Virus record (IMG/VR): IMGVR_UViG_3300032116_014939
Location: 178,065-242,064 of that record
Reading direction: 5' to 3' (one strand)
DNA length: 64,000 nt
Shown here: in pieces, positions 11,590 through 63,449 of the stretch
Layout of the letters: every line of letters begins with the position of its first letter
Numbering within the stretch: the stretch's first letter is position 1
Made by a program: the position numbers and the translations under genes
Notes under the pieces: model-generated
What the model saw: only the letters and a program-made list of their open reading frames with translations
What the model was told of the DNA's origin: nothing
Databases searched by the model: none

Positions 11590-13440
11590 TTATCTTAATT
11601 CATTCAAATCGAATGTACGAACACCATCAACGATGATACGTCCATAGAAACGGTTGTTAACCATCTTCTTAGCGTAACGTGTCATAATACCCTTGATAGG
11701 AGTAAAGTTGAATGGGTTATACATTGTTGGAGTTAATTGTAATGGTACGTATGGAGCGTAGATATATCCAGTATCCAATAACGAAGTACCTTTGTGACCA
11801 ATCAACACAGTGTTTGGTGGGAAGTATGGGTCACGGTATACTTGGTAACGACCACTCAAAGTACCAACTCTTTCAATACCCATGTTGTATTGGTCTTGCT
11901 CAGGAGCCGCGTTTGATACGTGGAAGTATTCCAAGTCATCAAAGATAGCACTGATTTCAGAAGATACAACAATCCAGTTAGCTCCACCTCTTAAAGTAGA
12001 CTTATGGATTTGAGCTGAAATTTGGTTGATTGCAGTAATCAACGTTTGATTCCAGTCCTTTTGAGTGTAAGGAGTTGATTGGTTGTTCAGACGCTTCCAT
12101 CCGTTGTAATCCCAACGTAATGTCCAAGCCGCACCTTTACGTAAGTCACGTAAGATTTCACGGTCAATTTCAGCTGCCACTTGCTCAGATAATAAAGCTG
12201 TTAATTCAGCTTCAGCATCGATGTTGTGGAACGCTGCAACGTCTTGAGCAAGTTCTGGAGACCATTGTGCTCTTAACTTTCTTTCAGTCACAGAAACTGT
12301 TACTGATTGAAGGTCGAAAGAAACTTCACCAATTTTGTCTTCAAATTCTAACTCTTGGTAACGCTTCCAATATGCAGTAACTGCTGTGTTAGTTGTAACA
12401 CCCGTTAAAGTAGTTGTGAAAGTAGTTCCAGTGTAACCATCAGGAGTAGATGCTCCACAAGAGATACATGCTGGTGTTTGTAAATCAACTTCTAAGTAGA
12501 TAACACCATCAGCACTACATACATCATAGAACGAACCTCCATTTCCTGGAGTTGCTCCACCTGGCCATGTTGTAGTTTTGCTAGTACCATATTCAACAAT
12601 ACCTTTACCGTATTTTTGTGTAACAACACGGAATAAAAGTGGTGTAGAAGTAGTAACATTACCACCAGATGCGTTAATTCTTGCAGCTAATGCAGAAGTT
12701 GGTAATAAAGTTAAATCAGAAAGGAATGTTTCAGTATCCATTTCTTGTCCATCAGGGCCAATTAACTTACCGTCACCTACTGATGTGAAACCAGACATTA
12801 CTAAAAGTAATTTTCTGTATTCACCTGAACCATATCCAGATACTACTAATGAACCGTTTGACCAAACTACTTGGTTAGTTGCACCAGTAACCCAATACCA
12901 ACCACCTTTTGAATAATCAAAAAGACCTGATGGGTTTAAACCTGGTTCATTTCCTTCATAGAATAAATCATAAAGGTTCTTTGGATACGCAGTTGAATCA
13001 GTGTAACCAGCATTTGGGTCACCAGGATAGTTTCCAGGAGAACCTACAGGTGCTCTGTGTCCAGCTTCTCCTGAAGCTCCTTGTGTTGGAGTTGCTGCAG
13101 AATAACCTTGAATTTGAGGTACAAAGTAGAACAATTTACCGATTGGTAAGTTCATAGCTTGTACAGATACGATTTCGTTAGCTAATAATTTAGAGAACAC
13201 ACGTCTGATGATAGGGAATACCACAGTTTCGAATGAACCTGAATCAGCAGTTGAAGCCGCTTCGTTAATTAAGAATGATGCTTGGTTTTCATACAACTGA
13301 GCAACGTTTTCTTTTAGGTGGCCTCTAAGACCTTCAAGGAACCCTAATTTGTCCCATTTGTTTATAGTGTCTTCTTTGATAACTTTCAAGTGCTTAAGAC
13401 CGATGTTACCTACTAATCCACTTTCTAATAATGCTCCCAT
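11590..13440 (-). CDS. gp23: major capsid protein, T4 gp23-like, with a large insertion
   Basis: 'VSVQAMNLPIGKLFY', 'RKLRAQWSPELAQD', 'IDAEAELTALLSEQVAAEIDREI', 'YAPYVPL', 'GIMTRYA'. Confidence 0.97.
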   Translation of the reverse strand: MGALLESGLVGNIGLKHLKVIKEDTINKWDKLGFLEGLRGHLKENVAQLYENQASFLINEAASTADSGSFETVVFPIIRRVFSKLLANEIVSVQAMNLPIGKLFYFVPQIQGYSAATPTQGASGEAGHRAPVGSPGNYPGDPNAGYTDSTAYPKNLYDLFYEGNEPGLNPSGLFDYSKGGWYWVTGATNQVVWSNGSLVVSGYGSGEYRKLLLVMSGFTSVGDGKLIGPDGQEMDTETFLSDLTLLPTSALAARINASGGNVTTSTPLLFRVVTQKYGKGIVEYGTSKTTTWPGGATPGNGGSFYDVCSADGVIYLEVDLQTPACISCGASTPDGYTGTTFTTTLTGVTTNTAVTAYWKRYQELEFEDKIGEVSFDLQSVTVSVTERKLRAQWSPELAQDVAAFHNIDAEAELTALLSEQVAAEIDREILRDLRKGAAWTLRWDYNGWKRLNNQSTPYTQKDWNQTLITAINQISAQIHKSTLRGGANWIVVSSEISAIFDDLEYFHVSNAAPEQDQYNMGIERVGTLSGRYQVYRDPYFPPNTVLIGHKGTSLLDTGYIYAPYVPLQLTPTMYNPFNFTPIKGIMTRYAKKMVNNRFYGRIIVDGVRTFDLNELR

Positions 13441-15227: not shown

Positions 15228-15947
15228 TTATTTTTTTAAATAATCGGAAAGTCTTCCCATTAAATCAAGCGATTTGTTAACTGTTCTTGCAGCTTTCATT
15301 TCGTTTTCTTCTTGTAGGTTCTCTTCAAACGCAAATCTTCCATCAGGTTCAGTAAATAAATAAGCTCCTGGTGTTGACGGTGAAGATACTAAGTCAAAAC
15401 AAATTAATTCAAAATCATCTTGTACTTCATTTTGGTCACCTACTTTTTTTAAAGAACCTACCCCTCTTGATGATATACCTAACGTTACACCTAATCTTAA
15501 TAGGTTTGCTGCTTGGTCACCCTTTGTTGACACAATACCTCTTTCATGGAACCCTGGTGAGGTTAGAAGTAATAACTTACCTAATAGAACATTACCATCC
15601 CACCACATCTCTGTAATCATGTGTGATACTCTATCCAAATCTATTAACGAAGATTCAGGATGGTTAAGTTCAGATAAGGCAGTTTTTTTACCTATATAAT
15701 TTTTTATATAATTTTCAGATTCTCTCTTTAAAATTCTTTCAGGATATATTCTACCATTTCTATTTGGTGTGTTATATTTTTGTAGAACGGCATAAAACTC
15801 AAATGGTTTTGAATAATCTTTAAAGTCCCTACTTTCTTGTAAGAATGTTTGATTATGTTTTTCTGTTGGGGAAACATATCCCGCATCCATCTCAATTAAA
15901 ATACCTCTTCCTGTCTCTCTTGGGCCTAATATTTTATAATTTTGCAT
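15228..15947 (-). CDS. gp21: prohead core protease, T4 gp21-like
   Basis: 'NRNGRIYP', 'SELNHPE', 'GISSRGVGSL', 'FDLVSSPSTPGAY'; His/Ser catalytic motifs present. Confidence 0.95.
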   Translation of the reverse strand: MQNYKILGPRETGRGILIEMDAGYVSPTEKHNQTFLQESRDFKDYSKPFEFYAVLQKYNTPNRNGRIYPERILKRESENYIKNYIGKKTALSELNHPESSLIDLDRVSHMITEMWWDGNVLLGKLLLLTSPGFHERGIVSTKGDQAANLLRLGVTLGISSRGVGSLKKVGDQNEVQDDFELICFDLVSSPSTPGAYLFTEPDGRFAFEENLQEENEMKAARTVNKSLDLMGRLSDYLKK

Positions 15948-16691: not shown

Positions 16692-17396
16692 ATTTTGAGT
16701 TAAACTCAATAACTTAATATATTCTTTTTTAGATGGTTTAGAATTTGTAATTCTTTCTTTTGTCTCAATTAAAACATTTTTAAGTTCTTCATCAGATTCT
16801 GAAATTAATGTATCAATTTTTTGAACAGCATTTTCTTTTAATTCATCAAATTTACTTTTTAAATTTTCTTCTTTTGAAGTTAAAATTTCTTTAATTGAAT
16901 TTCTTTCTGATTCAGTTAAATTTTCTAAATATTTTTCAGCAGTTTTATTAGCAACTTTTAACATTGAACTAATTGGAACTTTGGGTGTTTTACTTTCAAC
17001 AATTGGTTTAGTTTTAGTTAAACTTTCAACAATTTTCTTTTTAGCAATTGATTTTTTTTCAGGTTTAATCAAATCACCATACAATAAATCATCAATAGTT
17101 TCATATTTGTTTTCTAAAACTATATCCTTTGTCCAACTTTTAATAAACTTATTTGTTGATTCTGAAAGTTTCAAATTTCTAAATTCTGAAACCATATCCT
17201 CAACCAAGTAATTGGAAGTTTCTTTATCTAAACCTTTGTTTTCATTTAGGTTGTCATAAATTGACATCATTTTAACAAAATCTTTATTTTTTAATAGTTT
17301 TTTGTTAAAAAGATACATATCAGTTTTAAGAGTTTCATTTTTGAATGACTCTACCAACTTATTTTCTACTAGTGTTTTAATTATTCCGAATCTCAT
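16686..17396 (-). CDS. hypothetical helical head-module protein
   Basis: 236-aa ORF downstream of the portal gene; TATTTAT motif at 17414-17420 (minus strand). Confidence 0.75.
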   Translation of the reverse strand: MRFGIIKTLVENKLVESFKNETLKTDMYLFNKKLLKNKDFVKMMSIYDNLNENKGLDKETSNYLVEDMVSEFRNLKLSESTNKFIKSWTKDIVLENKYETIDDLLYGDLIKPEKKSIAKKKIVESLTKTKPIVESKTPKVPISSMLKVANKTAEKYLENLTESERNSIKEILTSKEENLKSKFDELKENAVQKIDTLISESDEELKNVLIETKERITNSKPSKKEYIKLLSLTQNL

Positions 17397-21175: not shown

Positions 21176-21207
21176 ATACTATAAATATAAAATTTATCTT
21201 AAAATAG

Positions 21208-28499: not shown

Positions 28500-29318
28500 T
28501 TAAAAATTAAACATTTGTGAATTATGTATGAATTGGTATTTCTGTTTACCAAGTTCTTCGATTAGTTTTTTACCTGTATTCATACCAGCAAAAACTTCAT
28601 GGACAACAACATACTCATTTGGTGTGTGATAGTTATGATATCCGATTGAGAAGTTGATACAAGAGAAGTCAAACTTCTTACGAAGTTGCCAAACATCAGT
28701 GTAAGGGTGTTGCATATATTTTGGTTCAGACAACATACCTTCAGAAAGAACTTTTTTAGCTTTTGTTTCAAATTCAGAATCCGTTTCAAATACTTTAACA
28801 CCATAACAATATTCTGTTACCATGTAGTCGTCAGGAGCGTCAAATTGAATTGCGTAACCTACATTACTAAAGAAATCTCTGTCAGCTTCTTTTGAACCCA
28901 AACAACCAACTTCTTCAGATACAAATAAAGCAACTTTAATTACATCAAAGACTTCCAATAACTGAAGACAAGCAAACACTCCACACTTATCATCACCACC
29001 AATACCTGTTGGGTTACCCAAATCGTTATATGCCTTAAGAGATAAACTTAGATTACCTTTTGAATCTTTAAGTTGTTCTTCATGGATATTGATTGTGTCA
29101 ATGTTATGAACCGTATCGGTATGTGCGACAATACAAGGATAAAATTCACCCTCGTTTATTTCACCCTTTGTGACATAAACATTTCCAAAGTCATCAACTT
29201 TAAAATTGTGTTTTTTTTCGGTTAAATATTCAACCAAAAATTCAATCATTAAATCTTCTTTAAATGATTTTGTAGGTATTGACAATACCTTTTTTAAGAA
29301 ATCAACATTTTCTATCAT
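28500..29318 (-). CDS. zinc metallopeptidase, M20/M28/M42 clan
   Basis: 'AHTDTV', 'GIGGDDKCG', 'SEEVGCLGS', 'GYHNYHT'. Confidence 0.85.
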   Translation of the reverse strand: MIENVDFLKKVLSIPTKSFKEDLMIEFLVEYLTEKKHNFKVDDFGNVYVTKGEINEGEFYPCIVAHTDTVHNIDTINIHEEQLKDSKGNLSLSLKAYNDLGNPTGIGGDDKCGVFACLQLLEVFDVIKVALFVSEEVGCLGSKEADRDFFSNVGYAIQFDAPDDYMVTEYCYGVKVFETDSEFETKAKKVLSEGMLSEPKYMQHPYTDVWQLRKKFDFSCINFSIGYHNYHTPNEYVVVHEVFAGMNTGKKLIEELGKQKYQFIHNSQMFNF

Positions 29319-30500: not shown

Positions 30501-30895
30501 GGGGATGTTTTTGGATTTGACAGGTATGAATCTGTCATAAAACGCACGTCGGGGCTAAACTAACCCTGTAAAACTGGTTTAAAACACAAACGGCAACACA
30601 ATTGCAAAACTTTCTACACTCGGTTTAATCCGTACTGAAGAAGTAACTGTAGCCTAATCTAAGATTAGTATACAACGGGGTCGGTGAGCATATAACCTTG
30701 CAACAGAAGCTTGTACTGTGGTGTGGTTTCTATCCGAAAAGAAACAAAGTGGAGGATTAGTTCTCAGTAAACCGAACCACTATAAAATAAGGGAATTGTG
30801 AAGTTTCGGATTGTTTAGAAAAACAATGACCTAAACGTGTAGTGTTTTATGGTCGACATATTTGGACCGGGGTTCGAACCCCCGCATCTCCACCA
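30501..30895 (+). ncRNA. ssrA: tmRNA
   Basis: 5' GGGGATGTTTTTGGATTTGACAGG and 3' GGTTCGAACCCCCGCATCTCCACCA; acceptor stem GGGGAUG/CAUCUCC with the G3:U alanine determinant, T-loop and encoded CCA; 395 nt. Confidence 0.95.
30592..30657 (+). other. tmRNA tag reading frame (A)GNTIAKLSTLGLIRTEEVTVA*
   Basis: Resume-like context ACAAAC|GGC AAC, then 21 sense codons and TAA. Confidence 0.7.
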
Positions 30896-33288: not shown

Positions 33289-33365
33289 TGGTACCCCCGA
33301 AGGGATTCGAACCCCTGACCCACAGATTAGAAATCTGTTGCTCTATCCTACTGAGCTACGAAGGC
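33289..33365 (-). tRNA. tRNA-Arg(UCU)
   Basis: GCCTTCG-TA-GCTCAGTAGGATAGAGC-A-ACAGA-TTTCTAA-TCTGT-GGGTC-AGGGGTTCGAATCCCTT-CGGGGGT-ACCA; TATATTTG promoter at 33378-33385 (minus strand). Confidence 0.95.
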
Positions 33366-44563: not shown

Positions 44564-45901
44564 TTAATGGTAACTTATTTGGTCTTTTTTCTTTTTTTCA
44601 AAGTGACGTTTTGCGTCACTTTGTGTTTTTCTAACACACATTGAAACTGCGTCGTCACATGATTGAGTTTTTATTGAACCGTGTTTATTACCTCTTCTTT
44701 TTTTACGTCTACCTGAACCTCCGCCAGTTAAACTAAATTTCCATTTGTATAGCATTGCCCAATATTTTTGACTTGGGTTTGTTATTTTTTCAGGAGGAGT
44801 ACTATCTGGTAAAGTTACATCTCTATCACCTGGAGCGTCAACATCGTAAAATATTTGTATTTTTACTGTTGGTCTAACATATCTGTATTTTTCATATGCT
44901 TTAGCACCACCTTTATCCGCGGGTTCAGGAGTCCCAAATTCATTTCTTTTCTTTTCTAAAGTTGTTGCTTGTGGTGTATTGGGTGTGACAAAATTATTAA
45001 AATTGTAATCAACACCTTTAGGTAAAAAACTATATCCCTTAGGTGGATTTGGGCCAGATGTACCATCACCATTTTGACCTTTAGCATTTATAGTCGTATT
45101 ACGTTTACCTGTACACCACCCACCTTTTAAATTTTCATAATTTTTCATTAAAAAGTTTTCAACAGTTGCTGCTCTTGCTTCTGATAATTTTTCAAAACTT
45201 AAATCTTTGGCCTCACCTTGATTTCTAAATCGGCTAGCACTTGATTCTAAAGAAATACTTTGTATACATATTCCCGCATTAGGGTAAGTTTGTCTAAGAT
45301 TGTCTAACGCAGTCTTGTATGGTTCAACAAAAGTTTGATAAAATTCATTTTCGCCTGCCGGTTTTAATCTCCAACTATTATTATCAAAAAAATCTTGTTG
45401 TACAACTTCGGATGGAATTATAACCGTATCAAGTTCTGGTGGTGTCTCAGACTTATTTGGTAGTTTCTGTTTTGGTAATTTCTCAAGTTCAGAAAATGAT
45501 TGTCTTGTTCCTAATCTACAGTATTTATATCTATCTCGACCTTCAGAATTTTTTACTTTTTTAATAATATCCGCAGCGAAATACATGTCGTCAGTTTTTA
45601 TTTTTCCCCATAGGTCGATTTGGTCTTGACCCGTAAGAATATTTTTTACGTACCCATTTTGATTTTCTTGGTAAACTAATGATTGAGCTTCACGGTATAA
45701 ATCCATAAACTTTTCATTATCTTCAGTATTTTCACCTTTAGATTTAAATAACTCATACTTTTCTGAATAACCACCTTCACCTTGAGTTAATTTACTTGAT
45801 GACTGAGATATAAATCTTTTTCTATCAGGAGTTTGTTCGCTAATAACTTTCTGTATAATTGCAACTAAATCATTTTCAGTTAACCTAACTATTTTTTTCA
45901 T
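44564..45901 (-). CDS. leader-bearing protein with an OmpA-C-like domain
   Basis: Leader MKKIVRLTENDL...VISEQ; 'ISLESSAS...EKLSEARAATVENFL...RYV' pattern. Confidence 0.55.
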   Translation of the reverse strand: MKKIVRLTENDLVAIIQKVISEQTPDRKRFISQSSSKLTQGEGGYSEKYELFKSKGENTEDNEKFMDLYREAQSLVYQENQNGYVKNILTGQDQIDLWGKIKTDDMYFAADIIKKVKNSEGRDRYKYCRLGTRQSFSELEKLPKQKLPNKSETPPELDTVIIPSEVVQQDFFDNNSWRLKPAGENEFYQTFVEPYKTALDNLRQTYPNAGICIQSISLESSASRFRNQGEAKDLSFEKLSEARAATVENFLMKNYENLKGGWCTGKRNTTINAKGQNGDGTSGPNPPKGYSFLPKGVDYNFNNFVTPNTPQATTLEKKRNEFGTPEPADKGGAKAYEKYRYVRPTVKIQIFYDVDAPGDRDVTLPDSTPPEKITNPSQKYWAMLYKWKFSLTGGGSGRRKKRRGNKHGSIKTQSCDDAVSMCVRKTQSDAKRHFEKKKKDQISYH

Positions 45902-48313: not shown

Positions 48314-49012
48314 ATGAAAGAATTATTAAATAACCCTGAAACTATAAAAAATTTTAAACTTTTACATTATATCCTATTAAGTAATGGTCTTACTCGTGTC
48401 AGTAATGACTTTTATGTTGATTACGACGGGAATGTTGATTATCACTTCTCACCTTGGACTAATAAAGGTGGAGCTTATGATATTATACCTAATAAATTAT
48501 TTGATTTTTTAGATAATTTTTTTGATTCTATTAAAGATGAAGTTTTAGATTCACTAGAAGGTGATGGTGACTCTAGAGCGACGGTATCATGTGAGTATTC
48601 AACAAGAGATAAAACTTTTACAATTGATGAAAGTATTCAAACTATGGGTTATGAATCATATTACCAAGAGTTTGAAATTGACGAAAAGGAATTACTTGAG
48701 GATATGGTTCAGTGGAAAGAAGATGGTAAACTTAAAATTAGAGTTGATTTTAGTGGTTCAGGTGATTCAGGTTATATTGATGACGTTGGTCTAATCAATG
48801 ATACTGATGACAAACATTATGAATTTACAGCGGTTTGGGAAAATAAGTTATACAACATTTTGGAGCAAAATCATGGTGGATGGGAAATAAATGAAGGTTC
48901 TGAGGGAACATTTATAATTAACAATGAAAACCAAACAATAGAATTAGATTTTCGTATGAATGTTGAACAATCTTCAACAGGTTACGAATTTAAACACCAA
49001 TTTGAGTTTTAA
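48314..49012 (+). CDS. DUF6878-like acidic protein
   Basis: 'VDFSGSGDSGYID...GGWEINEGSEGTF'; TATTTAT at 48303-48309. Confidence 0.65.
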   Translation: MKELLNNPETIKNFKLLHYILLSNGLTRVSNDFYVDYDGNVDYHFSPWTNKGGAYDIIPNKLFDFLDNFFDSIKDEVLDSLEGDGDSRATVSCEYSTRDKTFTIDESIQTMGYESYYQEFEIDEKELLEDMVQWKEDGKLKIRVDFSGSGDSGYIDDVGLINDTDDKHYEFTAVWENKLYNILEQNHGGWEINEGSEGTFIINNENQTIELDFRMNVEQSSTGYEFKHQFEF

Positions 49013-49326
49013 TAAACCTGAATAGTTCTTTGCGGTCTGTCATCACCAAAGTCAGGACAGAAATAAACATTGTTACCATCGTGGTAAATTGTTCCACCAA
49101 CTCCATTAGGAATTTTGTGTTTTTCATGGAATTTATCATCCAAATCTATTTGGTGATTTCCATCATGAATAACAAAACATAAGTTTTCAAAACCACACTT
49201 ATATTGTTGGTCTTTGTTTTTATGTTTCATAAACTCGTCAAAAGACATTACGTATCTTGCATCTTCGTTAAGGTATCTTTTAACTATAAATTCTAATTGA
49301 CTTTCTGTAATAATAAACTTTTTCAT
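49009..49326 (-). CDS. leader-bearing small protein
   Basis: MKKFIITESQLEFIVKRYLNE leader. Confidence 0.75.
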   Translation of the reverse strand: MKKFIITESQLEFIVKRYLNEDARYVMSFDEFMKHKNKDQQYKCGFENLCFVIHDGNHQIDLDDKFHEKHKIPNGVGGTIYHDGNNVYFCPDFGDDRPQRTIQVY

Positions 49327-49344
49327 ATACTATAAATATAAGGG

Positions 49345-51132
49345 TTAAGAATAAATTCCTTGACTATAAATTTTCCATTCTTTTTCTCTTCGGTCTCTAT
49401 GACTAAAATCTAAAAAGTTAATTTTAACTGAATTAGAATTTGGATTCATTTTTAAAGAAGTACTTAATTTTGGGGCCTTTGTTGTACAACCCGCAAATCC
49501 AACTTGATAACATAATGATGATAATGCATCAACTTGTTTTTGATTTAAATTAGGATATATTGCTAATAACTTACCTGCCAATTTATTTAAAGCAGTTTTT
49601 AAATACGTTTTAGCAATATCTTTTGTTATTGATGGGTCTTTAGGTGATACTTTTCTACCATCAGGGTAATAAACCGTACCATAACCAATTGTCGGGGTTC
49701 CAGATGGAACTCTACCTTTTAAACAACAATCAGATTCTCCTCTAATACATTTACCACCTTTAGCATCATCATAAACACAAGGAACAAAAAACTCAATATT
49801 ACCAACAAAATTTACAAGATTATCTGAAACACCTGTAGGTTTTTGATTGGTTTTCTCATTTTTTTTAGATATTTCACTTGAGGCTTTTTGAAGACCGGAT
49901 TTAATTGTTTTATTTATATCACTAACAACACCTCCCGAATCTGGTTTCATTTGGTCTTTTGGTTGACCCATAGAAGACCATTTATCCATAAAATTTGGTT
50001 CTTTATTTGATTGGTTAAAACCCATAGTTTTATTAATGTCATCAAAAACTGATTGCTCATTAATATTTGGTTTTAACACAGTCATTGCTTCAGGAAAATC
50101 CTTATTTAAAACATCCTCATCTTTATTTGTATAAGGAATATTCTGTAAAACATATCTAATTGAATTTAAACCTGAAATCTTTTTATCGTTAGAATCCAAA
50201 ACAACCCAAGGATGGTTTACAGTGGATGTTTTATCAAAAAGTTTTTGTTTATACTCTGTAAACTTTTCCCACACATCTTGCATTTTTTCATCATTCTCAG
50301 AATACTTCCAATATTTCAATGGTGACTTTTGTCTAAAATCAAATCTTTTAGCCTGAGTTTCTTTATCTATTGAGAACCAAAGTTTGAATAGATAATCACC
50401 GTCAATAACTAATGACTCCTCAAAGTCCTGAACATTATCCATAAAGTCTTCATATTCATCTGAAGAACCATAACCCATAACAGGTTCCACTAAACCTCTA
50501 TTATACCAACTTCTATCAAAGAAGTTTATCTTACCTTTCTCAATTTGATTTCTGTATCTATCCCACCAGTTCTTTCTTTCATCGGGTGTAGGAATACCAA
50601 GAGCAATAACTTTATAATATCTTGGATTTAAGTTTTCAGTAAACTTTTTAATTGTTGAACCTTTACCTGCAGAATCTCTTCCTTCAAAAACAATAATAAC
50701 AGTTTTACCTGTTTGTTTTAACCATTCCTGTAGTTTTAATAATTCAACCTGAAGGAAAAATAATTCTTTCTTATAAATGTCCTTATCTAATATTGATGGC
50801 TCTTCTTCAGGACTAACAACTTCTTTTTTAGTTTTTCTTTTTTCTAATGATTTAGTTAGTTGTTTGAAAAATTCAAAAATATTAATGTCTTTACTACCTT
50901 TTAATTTTAAAGTTTTTAAAATACCTCTTGTAACTAATCCAAAATCAACTAAGCCATCTTTTGAATATTCTTCAATCTTATTAATGAATTTTTGAATTTG
51001 AGCACTATATACTTTGTTATCTTTTAAAACCGCAACAAGAGATTTAACCTCAGGGCTATACTTTGGTTTGTCAGCTTCTGTCAAACCCATTATGTTTTTC
51101 ATCTTACTAACTTCAGTTAATAAATTCCTCAT
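49345..51132 (-). CDS. ppk2: polyphosphate kinase 2 fused to a C-terminal GH24 (phage-type) lysozyme
   Basis: PPK2 Walker A 'FEGRDSAGKGSTIK', Walker B 'FDRSWYNR', lid 'RQKSPLKYWK'; lysozyme 'IEFFVPCVYDD...TPTIGYG', 'LNQKQVDALSSLCYQVG', 'RREKE'. Confidence 0.88.
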   Translation of the reverse strand: MRNLLTEVSKMKNIMGLTEADKPKYSPEVKSLVAVLKDNKVYSAQIQKFINKIEEYSKDGLVDFGLVTRGILKTLKLKGSKDINIFEFFKQLTKSLEKRKTKKEVVSPEEEPSILDKDIYKKELFFLQVELLKLQEWLKQTGKTVIIVFEGRDSAGKGSTIKKFTENLNPRYYKVIALGIPTPDERKNWWDRYRNQIEKGKINFFDRSWYNRGLVEPVMGYGSSDEYEDFMDNVQDFEESLVIDGDYLFKLWFSIDKETQAKRFDFRQKSPLKYWKYSENDEKMQDVWEKFTEYKQKLFDKTSTVNHPWVVLDSNDKKISGLNSIRYVLQNIPYTNKDEDVLNKDFPEAMTVLKPNINEQSVFDDINKTMGFNQSNKEPNFMDKWSSMGQPKDQMKPDSGGVVSDINKTIKSGLQKASSEISKKNEKTNQKPTGVSDNLVNFVGNIEFFVPCVYDDAKGGKCIRGESDCCLKGRVPSGTPTIGYGTVYYPDGRKVSPKDPSITKDIAKTYLKTALNKLAGKLLAIYPNLNQKQVDALSSLCYQVGFAGCTTKAPKLSTSLKMNPNSNSVKINFLDFSHRDRREKEWKIYSQGIYS

Positions 51133-51168
51133 ACTGATAAATACTTTTTAATAAATATTTTGTTAATG

Positions 51169-51329: not shown

Positions 51330-52154
51330 ATGAAAAACACAGAAACTTACAACGAGTTAGTTCAAAAGATGAGAACATTCTTCCAAAACAAAGGTTTTAA
51401 AGAAGTTCCAACTCAATCAAGATTATCAATCTTGGCGGCGTGTGAAAATCCACACTCAATAACAACATTCAATTATCAAGGAGAAGTATGGCCACTACCA
51501 CAGACGGGTCAAATGTGGTTAGAATACGAACTTCTTAAGAATCCTGAATGGAACGGTGTCTATTGTATTTCAACGTCTTATAGACAAGAAAAAGACCCAA
51601 TTCCAGGTCGTCACGAAATGATTTTTCCAATGTTTGAATTCGAATCAAAAGGTGGAATGAAAGAAATGTTAAAACTTGAATCTGAACTTTTAGATTATTT
51701 AGGTTTTGATTCACCTGTAGAAGTTAACTACGATGATGTATGTGAAGAGTACGGTGGAGTTTCAATTTTAGAAAACGAACACGAAACAAGAATGTGGGAA
51801 GAAAAAGGTTCAGTCGTCTCACTTCAAAATTTCCCATACAGAACAAACCCATTTTGGAACATGAGAGAAAGTGAAAACAAAATATTCAACAAAGTTGATG
51901 TAATTCTTTACGGACAAGAAACAATTGGTTCCGCAGAAAGAAGTTCTAACGTAGAAGAAATGAAAAATAACTTCTACACAATAGAAAATGGAAAATATTC
52001 TGAAAAACTTTTTGAACTATTCGGAAAAGAAAGAGTTGAGAAGGAATTAGAAGAATTCTTATCTCATGATTTCTTCCCAAGATTTGGTGGTGGGATTGGG
52101 ATGACCCGTTTAGCAAGAGCTTACGAACTACTACAACAAGAAGTAACAGTATAA
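51330..52154 (+). CDS. class IIb aaRS catalytic-core paralog (AsnRS-like, probable asparagine synthetase)
   Basis: Motif 2 'STSYRQE...RHEMIFPMFEFE' and motif 3 'RFGGGIGMTRL'; 274 aa with no anticodon-binding OB domain. Confidence 0.8.
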   Translation: MKNTETYNELVQKMRTFFQNKGFKEVPTQSRLSILAACENPHSITTFNYQGEVWPLPQTGQMWLEYELLKNPEWNGVYCISTSYRQEKDPIPGRHEMIFPMFEFESKGGMKEMLKLESELLDYLGFDSPVEVNYDDVCEEYGGVSILENEHETRMWEEKGSVVSLQNFPYRTNPFWNMRESENKIFNKVDVILYGQETIGSAERSSNVEEMKNNFYTIENGKYSEKLFELFGKERVEKELEEFLSHDFFPRFGGGIGMTRLARAYELLQQEVTV

Positions 52155-52159: not shown

Positions 52160-52187
52160 AAATCCCCTCATTAGAGGGGATTTTTTT
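52160..52187. terminator. bidirectional intrinsic terminator
   Basis: AAATCCCCTC-atta-GAGGGGATTTTTTT. Confidence 0.85.
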
Positions 52188-52350
52188 ATTCTTTAATCTC
52201 TTTCATCAACTTACCCCACAAAGCTGTCTGTAATAGGATAAGACCAACACTTAAAACAAATACAGGTAATGATGGTGAGCTAACCATTAATACAACTGAT
52301 AATACAAGAGCGAACATTGCTGAAGTCAATTTTAGTTTTAAGTTTTTCAT
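52186..52350 (-). CDS. 54-aa two-TM membrane peptide (not in ORF track)
   Basis: MKNLKLKLTSAMFALVLSVVLMVSSPSLPVFVLSVGLILLQTALWGKLMKEIKE; TATATTTG upstream. Confidence 0.7.
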   Translation of the reverse strand: MKNLKLKLTSAMFALVLSVVLMVSSPSLPVFVLSVGLILLQTALWGKLMKEIKE

Positions 52351-52430: not shown

Positions 52431-52847
52431 TTAATATCTTCTTGTTTTTCTTCTGATATTTTCAGCCATTGGCTTCATTGGTTCTTCATCTTCAATATCC
52501 ATATTATCAACTTCAACTTCAGAATCCATTTCTTCACCTGAATTCATTTTATTACTTTCATAATCTTGGATGATAGACTTAAGTTCCATCGCCTCTTGTT
52601 CTTTTCCTTCAGTTTTTCTTAAATGACGATAAAAATCCTTAAGATAATCCCATCCTGCTATACCTAAAAGTGCAATAGTTGTACCAACCATTGTAGCAAT
52701 CGCCCCACCTGTACTCATAGCCTCAGGATTAAAGAAGTTTTCAACCGCTTCATTAACTCCATTTTTTTTATTTCTTTTTGTTTCTTTAACTACTGTTTTA
52801 ATTAAGTTAGTTAATTCTGATTCTGACAATCTTACTACTTTTTTCAT
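52431..52847 (-). CDS. leader-bearing protein with one TM segment
   Basis: MKKVVRLSESELTNLIKTVVKE leader; 'AIATMVGTTIALLGIAGW'. Confidence 0.75.
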   Translation of the reverse strand: MKKVVRLSESELTNLIKTVVKETKRNKKNGVNEAVENFFNPEAMSTGGAIATMVGTTIALLGIAGWDYLKDFYRHLRKTEGKEQEAMELKSIIQDYESNKMNSGEEMDSEVEVDNMDIEDEEPMKPMAENIRRKTRRY

Positions 52848-52865: not shown

Positions 52866-53441
52866 TTATCTTGGAGCACCTCTATATGATGCATTTGGTT
52901 TAATTGGTACTACATAATCAGGGGTTCCTTTATAAGTACAAAACGGTCTTGATGTAATTACTTTTGCTAAATCGTTATTTAGATAATCTTCTTTAATTCC
53001 ACCTTTTCTTTTGAAAGGTTCACCAATAGCACCTAATCCTTTTTCAAATGCCGAGTTACAATTCCATCTGAATTTAATAGGTTCACTATATCTTTTTTTA
53101 TCTCTATTTAAAAAAGTACCTGTATAACCCTCAACGTCCGAACCTGTAATATCTTGGACTGTAAATTCAACTGTTGGTAAATTATTAATCGTTGTTATTC
53201 CAACTTGTTTTATTTTATAGTTTTCAGAAGTTCTTTTACCTTTAAACATCCCACTTTCACCTGTATATTTGTTTAAACCATAAGCATTAAACATAAGAAC
53301 TTCAGAACCTGTAAGACCTGATACTTCCTTACGAAATTGTTCAGGTGTTTTTGCAGTTAAATCATCGTTTTCTTTTATAACTTTTTTAATTAAATTAATA
53401 AGTTCATTTTCTGTTAATCTAATAACTTTTTCTTTTTTCAT
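52866..53441 (-). CDS. leader-bearing hypothetical protein
   Basis: MKKEKVIRLTENELINLIKKVIKEN leader. Confidence 0.75.
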   Translation of the reverse strand: MKKEKVIRLTENELINLIKKVIKENDDLTAKTPEQFRKEVSGLTGSEVLMFNAYGLNKYTGESGMFKGKRTSENYKIKQVGITTINNLPTVEFTVQDITGSDVEGYTGTFLNRDKKRYSEPIKFRWNCNSAFEKGLGAIGEPFKRKGGIKEDYLNNDLAKVITSRPFCTYKGTPDYVVPIKPNASYRGAPR

Positions 53442-58276: not shown

Positions 58277-59116
58277 TTATACTCCTCTCATTTCTTTTAA
58301 AAATTTATTATATCTATCAATATTTGATTCGTTAATTTTATTTGATTTACTAGCATTTTCATCTTTCCACAAAGGTTGCAGATTAGTGTGATGATTTAAA
58401 TATATTTTTTCTTCAAATGTATTTCCACAACTAATGGGAACAATATGGTCAAAACACCATTCACTACGATTGTCCCATGACATACCCTCCTTGAATAAAC
58501 TTTCAAAATACTTTAATCCGCTACTATAATCAATTCCAAGAATTTCTTCAGGAGAAAATTTACTTCTATATTCAGGGAATCCTGATAAAGAATATGAAAG
58601 TATTGAACCAATACTTTGTTTATATTTAAACAGTGGCGCTTTATCGTAATCCAATTTATCACTTTTACACCTGTTAGCAATAGTAAAAAGAGGTCGGATA
58701 TTAGTATAATGAGAGTTTTTTTCATAACTCTCTTGATTTTCAGATTTACTTAAAGGAAATATATGGTCAACTTCCCAATCACCATAATTATCCCACGACA
58801 TACCATCAACAAATTGTTTCTCCAAATGTTCTTTTAACATAATGGCATCACATCCAATAATATCTTCGTAAGTTTTTCCTTCAGGTTTAGAATAACCACG
58901 TCTTTTAAATTCATTTTTTAGTCGAGATTTTAATGACAATAAAATTTTATAATGTATTTCAAGTGACTTTCGGTTCTTTCTAATCTCAACCCTAGATTTT
59001 TTAGCACATTCTTTACATTTAGAAGACACTTTATTTTTAGCAAAATAATATTCTGACCTAGGTTTGCTTTCCTTACATACATAACAAACTTTTAATTCAT
59101 CCAATCTATGACCCAT
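58277..59116 (-). CDS. HNH homing endonuclease-like protein with two HNH domains
   Basis: 'GMSWDNYGDWEVDHIFPLS...NIRPLFTIANRCKSD' and 'GMSWDNRSEWCFDHIVPIS...NLQPLWKDENASKSN'. Confidence 0.85.
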   Translation of the reverse strand: MGHRLDELKVCYVCKESKPRSEYYFAKNKVSSKCKECAKKSRVEIRKNRKSLEIHYKILLSLKSRLKNEFKRRGYSKPEGKTYEDIIGCDAIMLKEHLEKQFVDGMSWDNYGDWEVDHIFPLSKSENQESYEKNSHYTNIRPLFTIANRCKSDKLDYDKAPLFKYKQSIGSILSYSLSGFPEYRSKFSPEEILGIDYSSGLKYFESLFKEGMSWDNRSEWCFDHIVPISCGNTFEEKIYLNHHTNLQPLWKDENASKSNKINESNIDRYNKFLKEMRGV

Positions 59117-59168: not shown

Positions 59169-59552
59169 TTATATTTCTTTTATAAATTGACCAACACCTA
59201 CACTACGAAAACCTTTACTTCTTAATTTGTTTTTAACTCTAACCGCATCTTCTCTTTCAAAACCAGCATCGGCAAAATCTAAAGGTGCCCCCACATCAAC
59301 TATAACGTATCTACTAGTAATACCAAATTTAACACAATCAGTATCAATATATTGTCTTAAATAATTACGGATTTCGTCATAAAAATTATTAGATATGGTT
59401 TTATTATTAGAATCAACGTCATCATTAGGTGTTGGGTTATTTTTGGGGACAATACGTTTGGCTGGACGTTTTTTTTCAGCTTCTGATAATTTAACAACCC
59501 TTTTAATCAATCTTGTTAAATCAGATTCAGTTAATCTTACAATTTTTTTCAT
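59169..59552 (-). CDS. leader-bearing protein (paralog of 59558-59929)
   Basis: MKKIVRLTESDL leader; shared 'DVGAPLDF.D.GF...K.KLR..GF.S.GVGQ' domain. Confidence 0.8.
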   Translation of the reverse strand: MKKIVRLTESDLTRLIKRVVKLSEAEKKRPAKRIVPKNNPTPNDDVDSNNKTISNNFYDEIRNYLRQYIDTDCVKFGITSRYVIVDVGAPLDFADAGFEREDAVRVKNKLRSKGFRSVGVGQFIKEI

Positions 59553-59557: not shown

Positions 59558-59929
59558 TTAAAATTCGCTTGTTCTAACTTTTTTCGCATATTGACCTACA
59601 CCCCAACTATTAAAACCATGTTTTCTTAATTTATCTTTAGCTTTGTTTGCCTCACTTCTTGAAAATCCACAATCTTCAAAATCTAATGGAGCCCCAACAT
59701 CAAATACCAAATAATCTGCTAAATACTTATATGTAATACAACCCGCTTTAAGATACGGTTCCATAGCGTTAAACACCGGTTGTGTTTCAATATCTTTATC
59801 TGATGGTTTAGAATTAAATCCACTATAAAATGTGTCTTTTATCTTATCTTCCCAACTATCATTTTCTTTGATGACTTTCTTAACTATTTTAACCAAATCA
59901 GACTCGGTTAATCTTATAACTTTTTTCAT
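59558..59929 (-). CDS. leader-bearing protein (paralog of 59169-59552)
   Basis: MKKVIRLTESDLVKIVKKVIKEN leader; same C-terminal domain. Confidence 0.8.
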   Translation of the reverse strand: MKKVIRLTESDLVKIVKKVIKENDSWEDKIKDTFYSGFNSKPSDKDIETQPVFNAMEPYLKAGCITYKYLADYLVFDVGAPLDFEDCGFSRSEANKAKDKLRKHGFNSWGVGQYAKKVRTSEF

Positions 59930-60383: not shown

Positions 60384-60764
60384 TCACCAACGTTTGGGAT
60401 TAAACCATCCAAGATGTCTGCCGGTTTCCTTAAAGCTTTGACGATTATCATCATCTTCCTCATCTTCTTTACCAAGAAGAACATAATTCAAATCGTCAAG
60501 AACTGTATACTTATCAACCTCCTCATCATTAACATTCAAAAAAATATCACGTCCAAGATATTTCACCAACGGGGTACCTCCTTCAACATACTCATTGTAT
60601 AACTCAATAATACTCTGTGGTGAAGATGTTTCACCAACTTTATTTCTAACACCCTTAAATCCAGCAGATATGAAAATATCCTTTTCTTCATGTCTATTTT
60701 CCTTAACAACTCTTTTAACTATTTTAACCAAATCTGATTCAGTTAATGTTATAACTTTTTTCAT
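60384..60764 (-). CDS. leader-bearing protein
   Basis: MKKVITLTESDLVKIVKRVVKEN leader. Confidence 0.78.
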   Translation of the reverse strand: MKKVITLTESDLVKIVKRVVKENRHEEKDIFISAGFKGVRNKVGETSSPQSIIELYNEYVEGGTPLVKYLGRDIFLNVNDEEVDKYTVLDDLNYVLLGKEDEEDDDNRQSFKETGRHLGWFNPKRW

Positions 60765-60837: not shown

Positions 60838-61140
60838 TTATTTTTTCTTGTCTGTACGTTTAACTTCAACGTTATTAATAAAAACCTTTGTCGGGGGATT
60901 ATTTCTTGTCGATTCAAAATATTCATCAAAGGCGGTCCAGAACATATTTGGTTCTAAATTATATGTATTTAACATTTCGTTACCATGTATTGACAATCGA
61001 CTAACATCTTCAGAGTTGTAATATCTTTTTATTCTTTCTTTAAGAGCATCCATCTTCTGTTTCGGATATGTTTGCTCCGCAATAACTCGTTTAATTATAC
61101 GAGTCAAATCTGATTCTGTAAGTCTAATTATCTTTTTCAT
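60838..61140 (-). CDS. leader-bearing protein
   Basis: MKKIIRLTESDLTRIIKRVIAEQ leader. Confidence 0.78.
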   Translation of the reverse strand: MKKIIRLTESDLTRIIKRVIAEQTYPKQKMDALKERIKRYYNSEDVSRLSIHGNEMLNTYNLEPNMFWTAFDEYFESTRNNPPTKVFINNVEVKRTDKKK

Positions 61141-63206: not shown

Positions 63207-63449
63207 TTAATAATCTTCAGTACCCATAAATGCTTCGTCCCCAATATCACCTATAGTATCAATAATATCAGTTAAAACTCTTACGACACCTTCCGTTCCG
63301 TATGTTTTATAAACAGGTTGTAAAATATCCATAATTTGGACATGTACTGACTCAGTATCATCATGAAATGAATCTTCATCTCTTTCTTCATTAATAACCC
63401 TTTTAATTATATTGGTTAATTCTTTTTCTGTTAATCTAATCTTTTTCAT
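63207..63449 (-). CDS. leader-bearing small acidic protein
   Basis: MKKIRLTEKELTNIIKRVINEE leader; ATG at 63449. Confidence 0.78.
   Translation of the reverse strand: MKKIRLTEKELTNIIKRVINEERDEDSFHDDTESVHVQIMDILQPVYKTYGTEGVVRVLTDIIDTIGDIGDEAFMGTEDY

What the first reader, a model, noticed from the sequence alone, without database searches (positions are those of the whole stretch)
49345..51132. Polyphosphate kinase 2 fused to a phage lysozyme in one virion-style ORF
Seen: one uninterrupted 595-aa ORF made of a leader (MRNLLTEVSKMKNIMGLTEA), an intact PPK2 domain (about 50780-50070), a linker starting 'NINEQ', and a GH24 lysozyme (about 49835-49345). The lysozyme has E and D nine residues apart plus TIGYG, with a Cys-rich loop insertion. 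TATTTAT sits 4 nt from the ATG. Established: PPK2 makes NTPs from polyphosphate; GH24 cuts peptidoglycan; gp21 proteases cut after I/L-x-E. Inference: a packaged polyprotein that gp21 may split, delivering a wall hydrolase for entry and an enzyme that taps host polyP at the start of infection. I have not seen this architecture described.
Basis: partly seen in the sequence, partly recalled or inferred. Interest (0 to 1): 0.82.

Follow-up and report, generated by a model that had tools for sequence, protein, structure and literature searches.

The report
Leader-tagged polyphosphate kinase–lysozyme phage protein
A large freshwater T4-like phage really does encode one 595-residue protein joining an intact polyphosphate kinase 2 to an intact lysozyme, and its conserved leader and junction motifs suggest, but do not prove, that the phage's head protease cuts it into two enzymes carried in the virion.

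Summary
ORF 49345-51132 (-) encodes leader + helical N-domain + class-I PPK2 + disordered linker + complete GH24 lysozyme. The identical protein lies on 22 independent contigs, and unitigs from three runs bridge the junction, so it is not a chimera.

The locus is modular. Syntenic relatives carry PPK2 and lysozyme as two abutting genes, or leader + lysozyme without PPK2 (a clean ~1 kb in-frame cassette), or the same PPK2 fused to other wall hydrolases.

The window encodes a T4-type head module, including a gp21-family prohead protease. An (L/I)-x-E motif follows the leader in 20/23 non-redundant relatives (shuffle mean 8; 0/5000 reach 20). An (L/I/V)-x-E motif is in 30/30 distinct fusion junctions and at the start of 15/16 stand-alone lysozymes. 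Both sites in this protein fall in predicted disordered segments.

A second, related leader (MKKxxRLTESDL..IIKRVIxE) heads 8 unrelated ORFs here (a ninth weakly) and more than 25 with relatives, resembling T4 capsid-targeting sequences.

Packaging and cleavage remain inferred; no proteomics exists. I rate it a new variant of a known kind (T4-type targeted internal proteins with novel enzyme cargo) and moderately interesting.

The parts
49345..51132 (-). 595-aa ORF: leader B + N-domain + PPK2 + linker + GH24 lysozyme (stop codon 49345-49347)
51137..51157 (-). Two TATTTAT upstream elements (51137-51143 and 51151-51157), 4 and 18 nt before the ATG. A likely promoter-type element shared with head genes.
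   Evidence: 33 sense vs 11 antisense in the 40-nt upstream windows; 32 of 88 genes
51085..51132 (-). Leader B, residues 1-16 (MRNLLTEVSKMKNIMG); predicted helix 2-14
   Evidence: E7 and G16 are nearly invariant in A1. The HMM also finds it on lysozyme-only proteins and on an unrelated 128-aa ORF in L005. Model.
51076..51084 (-). Candidate protease site 1: L17-T18-E19, followed by A20
   Evidence: [LI]xE within 14 aa after the conserved Gly in 20/23 non-redundant relatives; shuffle mean 8.0; 0/5000 reach 20. Disordered 16-22 in the model.
50839..51054 (-). Helical N-domain, residues 27-98, specific to this phage PPK2 family
50074..50790 (-). Class-I-type PPK2 domain, residues 115-353
   Evidence: Pfam E=1.7e-70; TIGR03707 267.8 bits; PDB 4yeg/5ll0/3czq; Walker A, DRS and lid residues invariant
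50086..51082 (-). In-frame cassette of about 1 kb (N-domain + PPK2), present here and absent at the same locus in L008
   Evidence: blastn breakpoints at 51083 and 50085 with an 11-nt overlap. A strain branch point lies at 50087 in run X1.
50056..50064 (-). Candidate protease site 2: I357-N358-E359, followed by Q360, at the PPK2/linker junction
   Evidence: 30/30 distinct fusion junctions have [LIV]xE within 8 aa of the PPK2 end, whatever the C-terminal domain. It corresponds to the end of the leader of stand-alone lysozymes. It opens the disordered segment 355-429.
49825..50055 (-). Low-complexity disordered linker, residues 360-436
   Evidence: pLDDT about 30; variable in length among relatives
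49348..49824 (-). GH24 lysozyme domain, residues 437-595 (E447, D456, T481)
49693..49764 (-). Cys-bearing loop inserted between the catalytic Asp and Thr, residues 457-480
   Evidence: gap of about 18 residues relative to 6et6; Cys conserved in the clade
15228..15947 (-). gp21-family prohead protease (candidate processing enzyme); its own N-terminus has LIE at 17-19
   Evidence: PF03420 E=9.7e-27; phrog_207 E=3.1e-44
11590..13440 (-). gp23-type major capsid protein. Five [LI]xE sites in the first 60 residues, the last being FLINE followed by AAS.
   Evidence: PF07068 E=6.9e-73
49009..49326 (-). Conserved downstream 105-aa ORF with a weak leader-A-like N-terminus (MKKFIITESQLEFIVKRYLNE)
   Evidence: syntenic in L001-L008

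Best explanation
Shown: this is a genuine, conserved, modular gene of a freshwater jumbo phage (contigs up to 298 kb) that has a T4-type head. It encodes a short N-terminal leader helix, a helical N-domain, an apparently active class-I polyphosphate kinase 2, a disordered linker and an apparently active GH24 muramidase.

Inferred mechanism: the leader works like a T4 capsid-targeting sequence. The protein would be made together with head genes and recruited into the prohead core. The phage's gp21-type protease would then cut it after E19 (LTE|A) and after E359 (INE|Q). That would release a PPK2 of about 40 kDa and a linker-lysozyme of about 26 kDa, both of which stay in the head and leave it at infection. 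The lysozyme could then help open the wall, and PPK2 could make GTP/ATP from host polyphosphate before any phage gene is expressed.

The PPK2 unit is one exchangeable cargo cassette placed between a leader and a cleavage site.
For: 1. The fusion is real and widespread: 22 contigs carry the identical protein, about 50 clusters share the architecture, and unitigs bridge the junction.
2. Both enzymes look intact. PPK2 Walker A, DRS and lid residues are invariant, and the fold matches class-I PPK2. In the lysozyme, E447 and T481 are invariant, D456 is conserved in the clade, and the fold is GH24.
3. The same window encodes a gp21-family protease, a gp23-type capsid protein, a portal and TerL.
4. 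[LI]xE follows leader B in 20/23 non-redundant relatives at shifting positions (0/5000 shuffles reach this). All 30 distinct fusion junctions have [LIV]xE. 15 of 16 stand-alone lysozymes start with a leader ending in [LIV]xE.
5. Both sites lie in predicted disordered boundary segments.
6. The module boundaries coincide with the sites. L008 has leader + INEQ + lysozyme without PPK2, with clean DNA breakpoints. L005 has two abutting genes, each with its own leader.
7. The related leader A heads 8 unrelated ORFs in the window (a ninth weakly) and more than 25 with relatives, partly in tandem arrays. It is conserved as a peptide: 88 codon pairs differ synonymously, and nucleotide identity is 0.69 in the leader against 0.34 just after it.
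8. The capsid protein has FLINE|AAS at residue 60. A 236-aa ORF between the portal and protease genes has the highest [LI]xE density in the window. The protease has LIE at 17-19, compared with LIE-9 in T4 gp21 (PMC9026906).
9. TATTTAT precedes the target, most leader-A genes, TerL, the protease and the scaffold candidate, but not the aaRS-like, Clp-like or peptidase genes.
10. The literature shows that T4 targeting sequences are N-terminal propeptides of 10-20 residues, removed by gp21 after Glu, that they carry unrelated cargo into heads, and that packaged cargo is delivered into the infected cell (PMC9026906, PMC5694885, PMC9958956).
Against: - There is no direct evidence of virion location, cleavage or expression timing.
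- Leader B does not match the leader A HMM (E=1.2), and neither leader was compared with the T4 targeting sequence.
- The gene lies about 30 kb from the head module, among auxiliary genes (FKBP, aaRS-like, sugar isomerase).
- To my knowledge, a muramidase packaged inside a T4-type head is unprecedented.
- A 54-aa two-TM ORF about 1 kb upstream (52186-52350) could be a holin, which would make the lysozyme an ordinary endolysin.
- Hydrophobic-x-Glu could be conserved for helix or solubility reasons rather than for cleavage.
- The shuffle null ignores shared ancestry.
- TATTTAT precedes a third of all genes and its temporal class is unknown.
- The nearest cultured relative checked (Flavobacterium phage immuto) has no such leaders.
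Confidence: 0.5

Rival explanations
1. Cytoplasmic bifunctional late protein, that is, the phage's endolysin with a metabolic enzyme attached. PPK2 would boost the NTP supply during infection. The lysozyme would wait in the cytoplasm for a holin. The fusion would simply reflect the merging of two adjacent, translationally coupled genes. The leader would be a conserved N-terminal helix with some other role, such as oligomerisation, membrane association or regulation of stability.
For: - In L005 the two genes abut, with the stop overlapping the ATG, so a trivial fusion of neighbours is enough to explain the architecture.
- The closest solved structures to the C-terminal domain are phage endolysins.
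- A small two-TM ORF (52186-52350) is conserved nearby in all loci.
- Virus-encoded ppk2 is already reported as an auxiliary metabolic gene (PMC13188868).
- The neighbourhood is non-structural.
Against: - It does not explain why an endolysin, a PPK2 and more than 25 unrelated small ORFs share interchangeable, non-hydrophobic N-terminal leaders that end in [LIV]xE.
- It does not explain why the motif is retained at every fusion junction whatever the hydrolase type.
- It does not explain why the module breakpoints coincide with these motifs.
- The leader is not a Sec or SAR signal.
Confidence: 0.3
2. Tail- or baseplate-associated wall hydrolase (a virion-associated lysin on the tail, like T4 gp5), with PPK2 carried as a passenger domain.
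For: - Sister fusions carry PF18013 'phage tail lysozyme' or SleB-type hydrolase domains.
- Swapping of the hydrolase domain is typical of virion-associated lysins.
Against: - No OB-fold, beta-helix or other tail-attachment module is present. The model contains only the N-helices, PPK2, a disordered linker and GH24.
- The gene is not next to tail genes.
- The leader is shared with many small proteins that are unlikely to be tail parts.
Confidence: 0.08
3. Assembly chimera, or a pseudo-fusion created by a sequencing error at the junction.
For: None found, apart from a unitig branch at 50087 in one run.
Against: - The identical protein is on 22 contigs from JGI, ENA, NCBI and Logan assemblies.
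- Unitigs from three runs bridge the junction without indels.
- The architecture is conserved down to about 50% identity.
- The branch at 50087 is explained by co-occurring cassette variants.
Confidence: 0.01

Closest known systems
T4 internal proteins IPI/IPII/IPIII and Alt, with their capsid-targeting sequences cleaved by gp21
   Same: - Short N-terminal propeptide ending hydrophobic-x-Glu.
- The same tag on unrelated, fast-evolving cargo genes, some in tandem.
- A gp21-family protease and gp23-type capsid protein in the genome.
- T4 cargo includes an enzyme (Alt) delivered at infection (PMC9026906, PMC9958956).
   Different: - The leaders here are about twice as long (about 19-22 aa against 10) and fall into two classes (A and B).
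- No sequence similarity to the T4 tag was established.
- The cargo here would be a two-enzyme polyprotein with an internal site. T4 Alt is reported to have propeptides cleaved at both ends, but not an internal split into two enzymes.
- Packaging is not demonstrated here.
Ejection or internal head proteins of giant phages (phiKZ, 201phi2-1, SPN3US), processed by gp21-like proteases
   Same: - Many head proteins are cleaved after Glu at a short motif.
- Diverged paralogs keep identical N-termini.
- Propeptides carry redundant sites (PMC5694885, PMC9026906).
   Different: - Those phages use S/A/G-x-E motifs and mostly long propeptides (over 100 aa).
- They are not reported to carry PPK2 or a GH24 lysozyme in the head.
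Class-I PPK2 enzymes (Francisella tularensis PPK2 4yeg/5ll0; Sinorhizobium SMc02148 3czq/6dzg) and virus-encoded ppk2 auxiliary genes
   Same: - 40-44% identity and the same fold (TM 0.76-0.82).
- Walker A, the DRS Asp (equivalent to Francisella D117) and the lid residues are conserved.
- Viral ppk2 genes have been reported from metagenomes (PMC13188868).
   Different: - This protein has an extra leader and an N-domain of about 100 aa.
- It is fused to a wall hydrolase.
- It scores below the TIGR03707 equivalog cut-off (267.8 against 301.8 bits).
GH24 phage endolysins (AbLys1 8app, PHAb10/11 9kbq/9kbs, 6et6, P22 lysozyme 2anv, T4 lysozyme)
   Same: - Complete GH24 fold.
- Glu-(8 residues)-Asp and a Thr in TIGYG.
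- C-terminal RRxxE motif.
   Different: - An insertion of about 18-24 residues with conserved cysteines between Asp and Thr.
- Six conserved Cys in total.
- It is preceded by a leader or linker rather than by a wall-binding domain or signal sequence.
T7 gp16-type internal core proteins (an ejected virion protein with a wall-cleaving domain; recalled from my own knowledge)
   Same: The concept of a head-internal, ejected protein that carries a peptidoglycan-cleaving domain used at entry.
   Different: - Different fold (lytic transglycosylase) and a different phage type.
- No propeptide processing and no metabolic enzyme.
- This is an analogy only and was not tested here.

Membership tests
PPK2 (PF03976), class I | Domain model match above the curated threshold | tested here: met
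   Pfam 237.6 bits against a cut-off of 22.3, covering profile positions 2-227 of 229
PPK2 (PF03976), class I | Equivalog-level match to single-domain NDP-phosphorylating PPK2 (TIGR03707) | tested here: inconclusive
   It is the best NCBIfam hit, but 267.8 bits is below the 301.8 cut-off. The top structural and sequence neighbours are class-I enzymes.
PPK2 (PF03976), class I | Walker A, Walker B-type DRS Asp and lid basic residues conserved | tested here: met
   G151-G158, D206-Y210, R263, R267, K273 and K276 are invariant in 32 sequences. D206 aligns with the FDRSWY Asp of Francisella PPK2.
PPK2 (PF03976), class I | Polyphosphate-dependent nucleotide phosphorylation activity | not testable with these tools
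   Needs an enzyme assay
GH24 lysozyme (PF00959) | Domain model or profile match over the whole catalytic domain | tested here: met
   Pfam 39.8 bits against a cut-off of 22.3, but only profile positions 14-83 of 125. The family profile against PDB 6et6 gives E=7e-31 over the full domain.
GH24 lysozyme (PF00959) | Catalytic Glu, Asp and Thr in T4-lysozyme spacing | tested here: met
   E447 and T481 are invariant in 29 sequences. D456 lies nine residues after E447 and is conserved in the clade. The Asp-Thr spacing is lengthened by the loop insertion.
GH24 lysozyme (PF00959) | T4-lysozyme-like fold | tested here: met
   Model pLDDT 94; TM 0.7-0.79 to 8app, 9kbq, 6et6 and 2anv
GH24 lysozyme (PF00959) | Muramidase activity | not testable with these tools
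   Needs a zymogram or turbidity assay
T4-type capsid-targeted, gp21-processed internal proteins | Genome encodes a gp21-family (S77) prohead protease and a gp23-type capsid protein | tested here: met
   PF03420 E=9.7e-27 and PF07068 E=6.9e-73
T4-type capsid-targeted, gp21-processed internal proteins | Short N-terminal propeptide ending in hydrophobic-x-Glu | tested here: met
   LTE at 17-19; the motif is present in 20/23 non-redundant relatives, with 0/5000 shuffles reaching that count; the segment is disordered in the model
T4-type capsid-targeted, gp21-processed internal proteins | The same tag on unrelated cargo proteins | tested here: met
   Leader B is found on PPK2, on lysozyme-only proteins, on a 128-aa ORF in L005 and on P0151. 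Leader A is found on more than 25 unrelated ORFs.
T4-type capsid-targeted, gp21-processed internal proteins | Sequence similarity to the T4 IPIII targeting sequence | not tested
   No tool-derived T4 sequence was compared. The leaders here are longer (about 19-22 aa against 10).
T4-type capsid-targeted, gp21-processed internal proteins | Presence in virions with the leader removed | not testable with these tools
   Needs virion mass spectrometry. No cultured host or phage was found; the immuto phage lacks the leaders.
Canonical endolysin of a lysis cassette | Adjacent holin or spanin genes | tested here: inconclusive
   A 54-aa two-TM ORF at 52186-52350 is conserved about 1 kb upstream, but an opposite-strand gene separates it from the target. 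No holin family match was sought.
Canonical endolysin of a lysis cassette | Either no N-terminal extension, or a Sec/SAR hydrophobic signal | tested here: not met
   The N-terminus is a charged amphipathic leader, followed here by 355 residues of N-domain and PPK2. Stand-alone versions also carry a non-hydrophobic leader.
Tail-associated lysozyme (T4 gp5-like) | OB-fold or beta-helix attachment modules around the lysozyme | tested here: not met
   The model shows only the helical N-domain, PPK2, a disordered linker and GH24. No other Pfam domain is present.

The most novel reading that the evidence does not exclude
Freshwater T4-like jumbo phages would use two related families of cleavable N-terminal address tags to load dozens of interchangeable cargo proteins into the head. 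The cargo includes metabolic enzymes (PPK2), several classes of wall hydrolase and peptidoglycan-binding proteins. This ORF would be a two-cargo polyprotein cut by the prohead protease. A polyphosphate-driven NTP-regenerating enzyme and a muramidase would then be injected with the DNA, giving the phage an energy supply from host polyphosphate before any phage gene is expressed.
Probability: 0.4. Interest if true: 0.78.

Novelty: new variant of a known kind. Interest (0 to 1): 0.62.

Why it matters
If the inference holds, it would extend the T4 capsid-targeting principle, known mainly from a few small internal proteins and Alt, to a large and rapidly shuffling repertoire in environmental jumbo phages. 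It would also give the first case of a metabolic, energy-supplying enzyme pre-packaged in a virion.

That would change how viral 'auxiliary metabolic genes' such as ppk2 are read. Some may act at the moment of entry in energy-poor freshwater hosts, rather than during replication.

The leaders and their (L/I)-x-E sites also give a simple sequence rule for predicting virion cargo in uncultured phages, and possibly a natural tag for loading proteins into capsids.

Even if packaging is wrong, one result stands. PPK2 is repeatedly and interchangeably coupled to at least three recognised classes of cell-wall hydrolase, plus C-termini with no family match. That linkage is undescribed and needs an explanation.

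Tried and rejected
- **Assembly chimera:** rejected.
- **Target leader belongs to the abundant leader A family:** not supported by the HMM (E=1.2). I treat it as a separate class B of similar design.
- **GLTE is a fixed conserved site:** rejected. The alignment column is not conserved. What is conserved is the motif, at shifting positions.
- **TATTTAT is enriched overall:** only weakly (59 against 47.5±7; 4 of 100 shuffles reach it). The real signal is positional and strand-specific, and the motif is not specific to this gene.
- **N-domain (1-112) is a general targeting domain on other cargo:** the exhaustive search found only PPK2 family members and fragments, plus one 99-aa protein that shares only the first ~40 residues.
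- **Leader A in cultured phages:** tblastn with a 25-aa query gave nothing, which is uninformative at that length. The HMM scan of 150 kb of Flavobacterium phage immuto gave no significant hit. Microcystis phage Mel-JY01 was not scanned.
- **Near-identical DNA in the phage collection:** none.
- **Literature:** searches for PPK2 with phage lysozyme or jumbo phage returned nothing relevant.
- **Explicit (L/I)-x-E wording for T4 gp21:** not found in the open texts I read. Only the LIE-9 example is given (PMC9026906), so the consensus is cited from textbook knowledge.
- **Leader A is merely a DNA repeat:** rejected, because synonymous codon differences are frequent.
Full report
**1. Observation**

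Window 49345-51132 (-) is one uninterrupted 595-codon ATG ORF. Pfam finds PPK2 at residues 115-338 (E=1.7e-70) and Phage_lysozyme at 476-549 (E=7e-10, a partial match). NCBIfam's best model is the single-domain PPK2 TIGR03707, at 267.8 bits, below its equivalog cut-off of 301.8.

The residue numbering was verified:
- leader 1-16, then LTE at 17-19
- Walker A at 151-158 and FDRSWY at 205-210
- PPK2 end VLKP at 352-355, then INEQ at 357-360
- catalytic E447, D455/D456, and TIGYG at 481-485
- Cys at 452, 462, 469, 470, 541 and 549

**2. Not an artefact**

The identical protein is encoded on 22 contigs from independent JGI, NCBI and other assemblies, the longest shown being 132.7 kb. About 50 clusters at 90% identity share the PPK2 + PF00959 architecture, down to about 50% identity.

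In Logan unitigs of four freshwater runs there are no indels or joints. Records from three runs span the PPK2/lysozyme junction at about 50067: X9 49111-50518, X16 48800-50182 and X3 49898-50445. In X1 the graph branches at 50087, which is the 3' end of PPK2.

**3. What genome this is**

The window has 30.6% GC. It carries the following:
- a gp23-type major capsid protein (11590-13440; PF07068)
- a gp21-family prohead protease (15228-15947; PF03420)
- a portal (17421-19268)
- TerL (19430-21175)
- a tmRNA (30501-30895; Rfam 133.5 bits) and a tRNA-Arg

Related contigs reach 298.6 kb, and the runs that hold the sequence are lake or freshwater metagenomes. The closest capsid proteins are from an uncultured 484-kb phage, Microcystis phage Mel-JY01 and Flavobacterium phage immuto, at 41-46% identity. 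So this is an uncultured freshwater jumbo phage with a T4-type head.

**4. Both enzymes look functional**

*PPK2.* Identity to Francisella PPK2 is 40-44%, and the fold matches at TM 0.76-0.82. Sinorhizobium class-I PPK2 comes next. The Walker A residues, the DRS Asp and the lid Arg/Lys residues are invariant across 32 family members.

*Lysozyme.* A family profile matches solved GH24 endolysins over the whole domain (6et6, E=7e-31). The domain model has pLDDT 94 and superposes on 8app, 9kbq, 6et6, P22 lysozyme and T4 lysozyme. E447, T481 and the C-terminal RR..E are invariant in 29 sequences, and D456 is kept in the clade. Relative to 6et6 there is an insertion of about 18 residues between Asp and Thr. 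It carries three of six clade-conserved cysteines.

**5. The locus is modular**

The same syntenic slot is flanked by an aaRS-like gene upstream on the opposite strand, and by a 105-aa ORF, DUF6878 and DUF6915 downstream. Relatives show these states:
- **(i) Fused form.** The window and L001-L004.
- **(ii) Two abutting genes.** L005 has PPK2 (366 aa) whose stop overlaps the ATG of a 298-aa GH24 lysozyme. That lysozyme begins with its own short leader, MNLVKILRNIILEQ.
- **(iii) Lysozyme without PPK2.** L008 (a 294.7-kb contig) has a 249-aa protein made of the same leader B joined directly to NINEQ, the linker and the Cys-loop lysozyme. At the DNA level, the window and L008 align up to 51083 (95% identity) and again from 50085 (86%), with an 11-nt overlap. 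The N-domain + PPK2 is therefore a clean in-frame cassette of about 1 kb. Its 3' breakpoint matches the strain branch in run X1.
- **(iv) Other hydrolases.** PPK2 parts that are 85-94% identical are fused instead to SleB-type Hydrolase_2, to Phage_lysozyme2, or to C-termini with no Pfam match. One of these, P0052 in L007, sits in the same syntenic slot.

Outside this slot, PPK2 also occurs alone in a different context, in L006.

**6. Leaders and sites**

*Leader B.* The N-terminus, M(R/K)x(L/I)L(T/S)E(V/I)......(M/L)G, is conserved in the PPK2 family, with E7 and G16 nearly invariant. It also occurs on the lysozyme-only proteins and on an unrelated 128-aa ORF in L005.

*Site after the leader.* The GLTE column itself is not conserved. 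However, an (L/I)-x-E lies within 14 residues after the Gly in 20 of 23 N-termini dereplicated at under 60% identity. Shuffled controls average 8.0, and none of 5000 reach 20. Two exceptions have V-x-E, and the third was mis-anchored by the script and has INE.

*Site at the junction.* All 30 distinct strings that follow the PPK2 end in fused proteins contain (L/I/V)-x-E within 8 residues, whatever hydrolase follows. Unfused proteins stop within 0-6 residues. Of the 16 stand-alone lysozymes, 15 start with a leader containing the motif.

*Structure.* In the AlphaFold model the leader is a helix (2-14). Segments 16-22 and 355-429 are disordered, so both candidate sites sit exposed at module boundaries.

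**7. A second, abundant leader**

Eight ORFs in the window start with MKK(I/V)(I/V)RLTE(S/N)(D/E)L..(I/L)(I/V)K(K/R)V(I/V).E, and a ninth (49009-49326) resembles it weakly. Several form a tandem array at 59-63 kb. An HMM finds more than 25 carriers in the window plus L004, L005 and L007. One carries MORN + PG_binding_1 domains and another has a transmembrane segment.

Conservation is at the peptide level. Among leader codon pairs, 88 differ synonymously and 129 are identical. Nucleotide identity is 0.69 in the leader, against 0.34 just downstream and 0.38 upstream. The target's own leader does not match this HMM (E=1.2). Its design is similar, though: MKK-like start, LTE, an amphipathic stretch, then hydrophobic-x-Glu.

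**8. Fit with a T4-type protease**

The literature establishes the following (PMC9026906, PMC5694885, PMC9958956):
- T4 capsid-targeting sequences are N-terminal propeptides of 10-20 residues.
- They direct even foreign proteins into the prohead.
- gp21 removes them by cutting after Glu.
- gp21 also trims 65 residues from gp23 and shreds the core proteins.

The (L/I)-x-E consensus itself is textbook knowledge. The open texts I read give only the example LIE-9 in gp21.

In this window:
- The capsid protein has five (L/I)-x-E sites in its first 60 residues, ending FLINE|AAS.
- A 236-aa ORF between the portal and protease genes has the highest site density (5.1 per 100 aa against a median of 1.4).
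- The protease has LIE at 17-19.

Equating FLINE|AAS with the T4 gp23 maturation site is my inference.

**9. Upstream element**

TATTTAT is the most frequent heptamer in the 40 nt upstream of genes, with 33 sense and 11 antisense occurrences, and it precedes 32 of 88 genes. It lies before the target, most leader-A genes, TerL, the protease, the scaffold candidate and the core-like ORF. It is absent before the aaRS-like, Clp-like and peptidase genes. Its count over the whole window is only mildly raised. This is compatible with co-expression with head genes, but its temporal class is unknown.

**10. Interpretation**

*Shown:* the protein is real, conserved and modular, with two apparently intact enzymes. 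It carries conserved leaders and hydrophobic-x-Glu motifs exactly at the module boundaries, in a genome that encodes a gp21-family protease.

*Inferred:* the leader is a capsid-targeting propeptide. The protease would cut after E19 and E359, and PPK2 (about 40 kDa) and linker-lysozyme (about 26 kDa) would be carried in the head and released at infection. I give this 0.5.

*Main rival (0.3):* a cytoplasmic late protein that is the endolysin fused to its neighbouring metabolic gene, possibly working with the nearby 54-aa two-TM ORF. This rival does not account for the shared leaders or the junction motif.

*Other rivals:* a tail-associated lysin (0.08) lacks any attachment module. An artefact (0.01) is excluded.

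**11. Novelty**

I found no paper describing PPK2 fused to a wall hydrolase, or these leaders. Viral ppk2 genes have been reported only as auxiliary metabolic genes (PMC13188868).

The principle of a cleavable targeting tag is known from T4. The new elements are the tag families, the enzyme cargo, the polyprotein arrangement and the cassette exchange. I therefore rate it a new variant of a known kind, with interest 0.62.

No cultured relative with the leaders was found. Flavobacterium phage immuto was negative over 150 of its 160 kb, so the decisive tests need environmental proteomics or recombinant protease assays.

Noticed in passing
window 44564-45901, 52431-52847, 52866-53441, 59169-59552, 59558-59929, 60384-60764, 60838-61140, 63207-63449 (all on the - strand); weaker at 49009-49326, 8604-9122, 9124-9579: A family of near-identical N-terminal leaders of about 22 aa (MKKxxRLTESDL..IIKRVIxE) sits on otherwise unrelated ORFs of 80-445 aa, partly in a tandem array. 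More than 25 carriers are found once the related loci are included. Conservation is at the peptide level and stops abruptly after the leader.
   Followed up: yes
window 30501-30895 (+) and 33289-33365 (-): A phage-encoded tmRNA (Rfam RF00023, 133.5 bits; ARAGORN tag peptide AKLSTLGLIRTEEVTVA) and a tRNA-Arg (TCT).
   Followed up: partly
window 51330-52154 (+): A 274-aa protein consisting only of a class-II aminoacyl-tRNA-synthetase catalytic core (PF00152; phrog_29758, E=7.5e-96), with no anticodon-binding domain. It is a conserved divergent neighbour of the PPK2/lysozyme slot in all syntenic loci (L001-L005, L007, L008).
   Followed up: no
window 52186-52350 (-): A 54-aa ORF with two hydrophobic segments (holin-like), conserved in the syntenic loci, about 1 kb upstream of the target. 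It is relevant to the endolysin rival.
   Followed up: no
window 16686-17396 (-): A 236-aa ORF between the portal and protease genes has the highest (L/I)-x-E density in the window (12 sites; 5.1 per 100 aa against a median of 1.4). It looks like a prohead core protein that would be cut into small pieces.
   Followed up: partly
window-wide, e.g. 21181-21187, 15964-15970, 14910-14916, 49332-49338, 51137-51143 (- strand): TATTTAT lies 4-28 nt upstream of 32 of 88 genes and is strongly strand-biased (33 sense, 11 antisense). Where it sits only 4-6 nt from the ATG, the mRNAs may be leaderless or nearly so.
   Followed up: partly
window 26419-28482 (+) and 28500-29318 (-): A 687-aa two-AAA+ Clp-type 'ATP-dependent protease' (phrog_4871, E=6e-237) lies next to a 272-aa peptidase (phrog_4191; weak sub-threshold Pfam hits to metallopeptidase families M20/M28/M42). 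Together with the tmRNA and an FKBP gene, this suggests the phage brings its own protein quality-control kit.
   Followed up: no
L005 7101-7997; P0137, P0141, P0142, P0144, P0145; also P0105 and P0110: A conserved module of about 100 aa (DPKNPDSYP...W.TFY...KKWG...AKKQFLRYWEP...MWN) sits between the leader site and the hydrolase domain. It occurs in many stand-alone lysozymes and in some PPK2 fusions, but not in the window protein. It has no Pfam match.
   Followed up: no
L004 1925-2764: A leader-A protein with MORN repeats and a PG_binding_1 domain, so the leader also tags a peptidoglycan-binding protein. In the window, the corresponding 279-aa slot (58277-59116) instead holds an HNH/endonuclease VII-like protein without the leader.
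   Followed up: no
window 50087 (run X1) and other loose ends: Co-occurring strain variants within single lake samples diverge exactly at the 3' end of PPK2. This is consistent with cassette variants circulating together in one population.
   Followed up: partly
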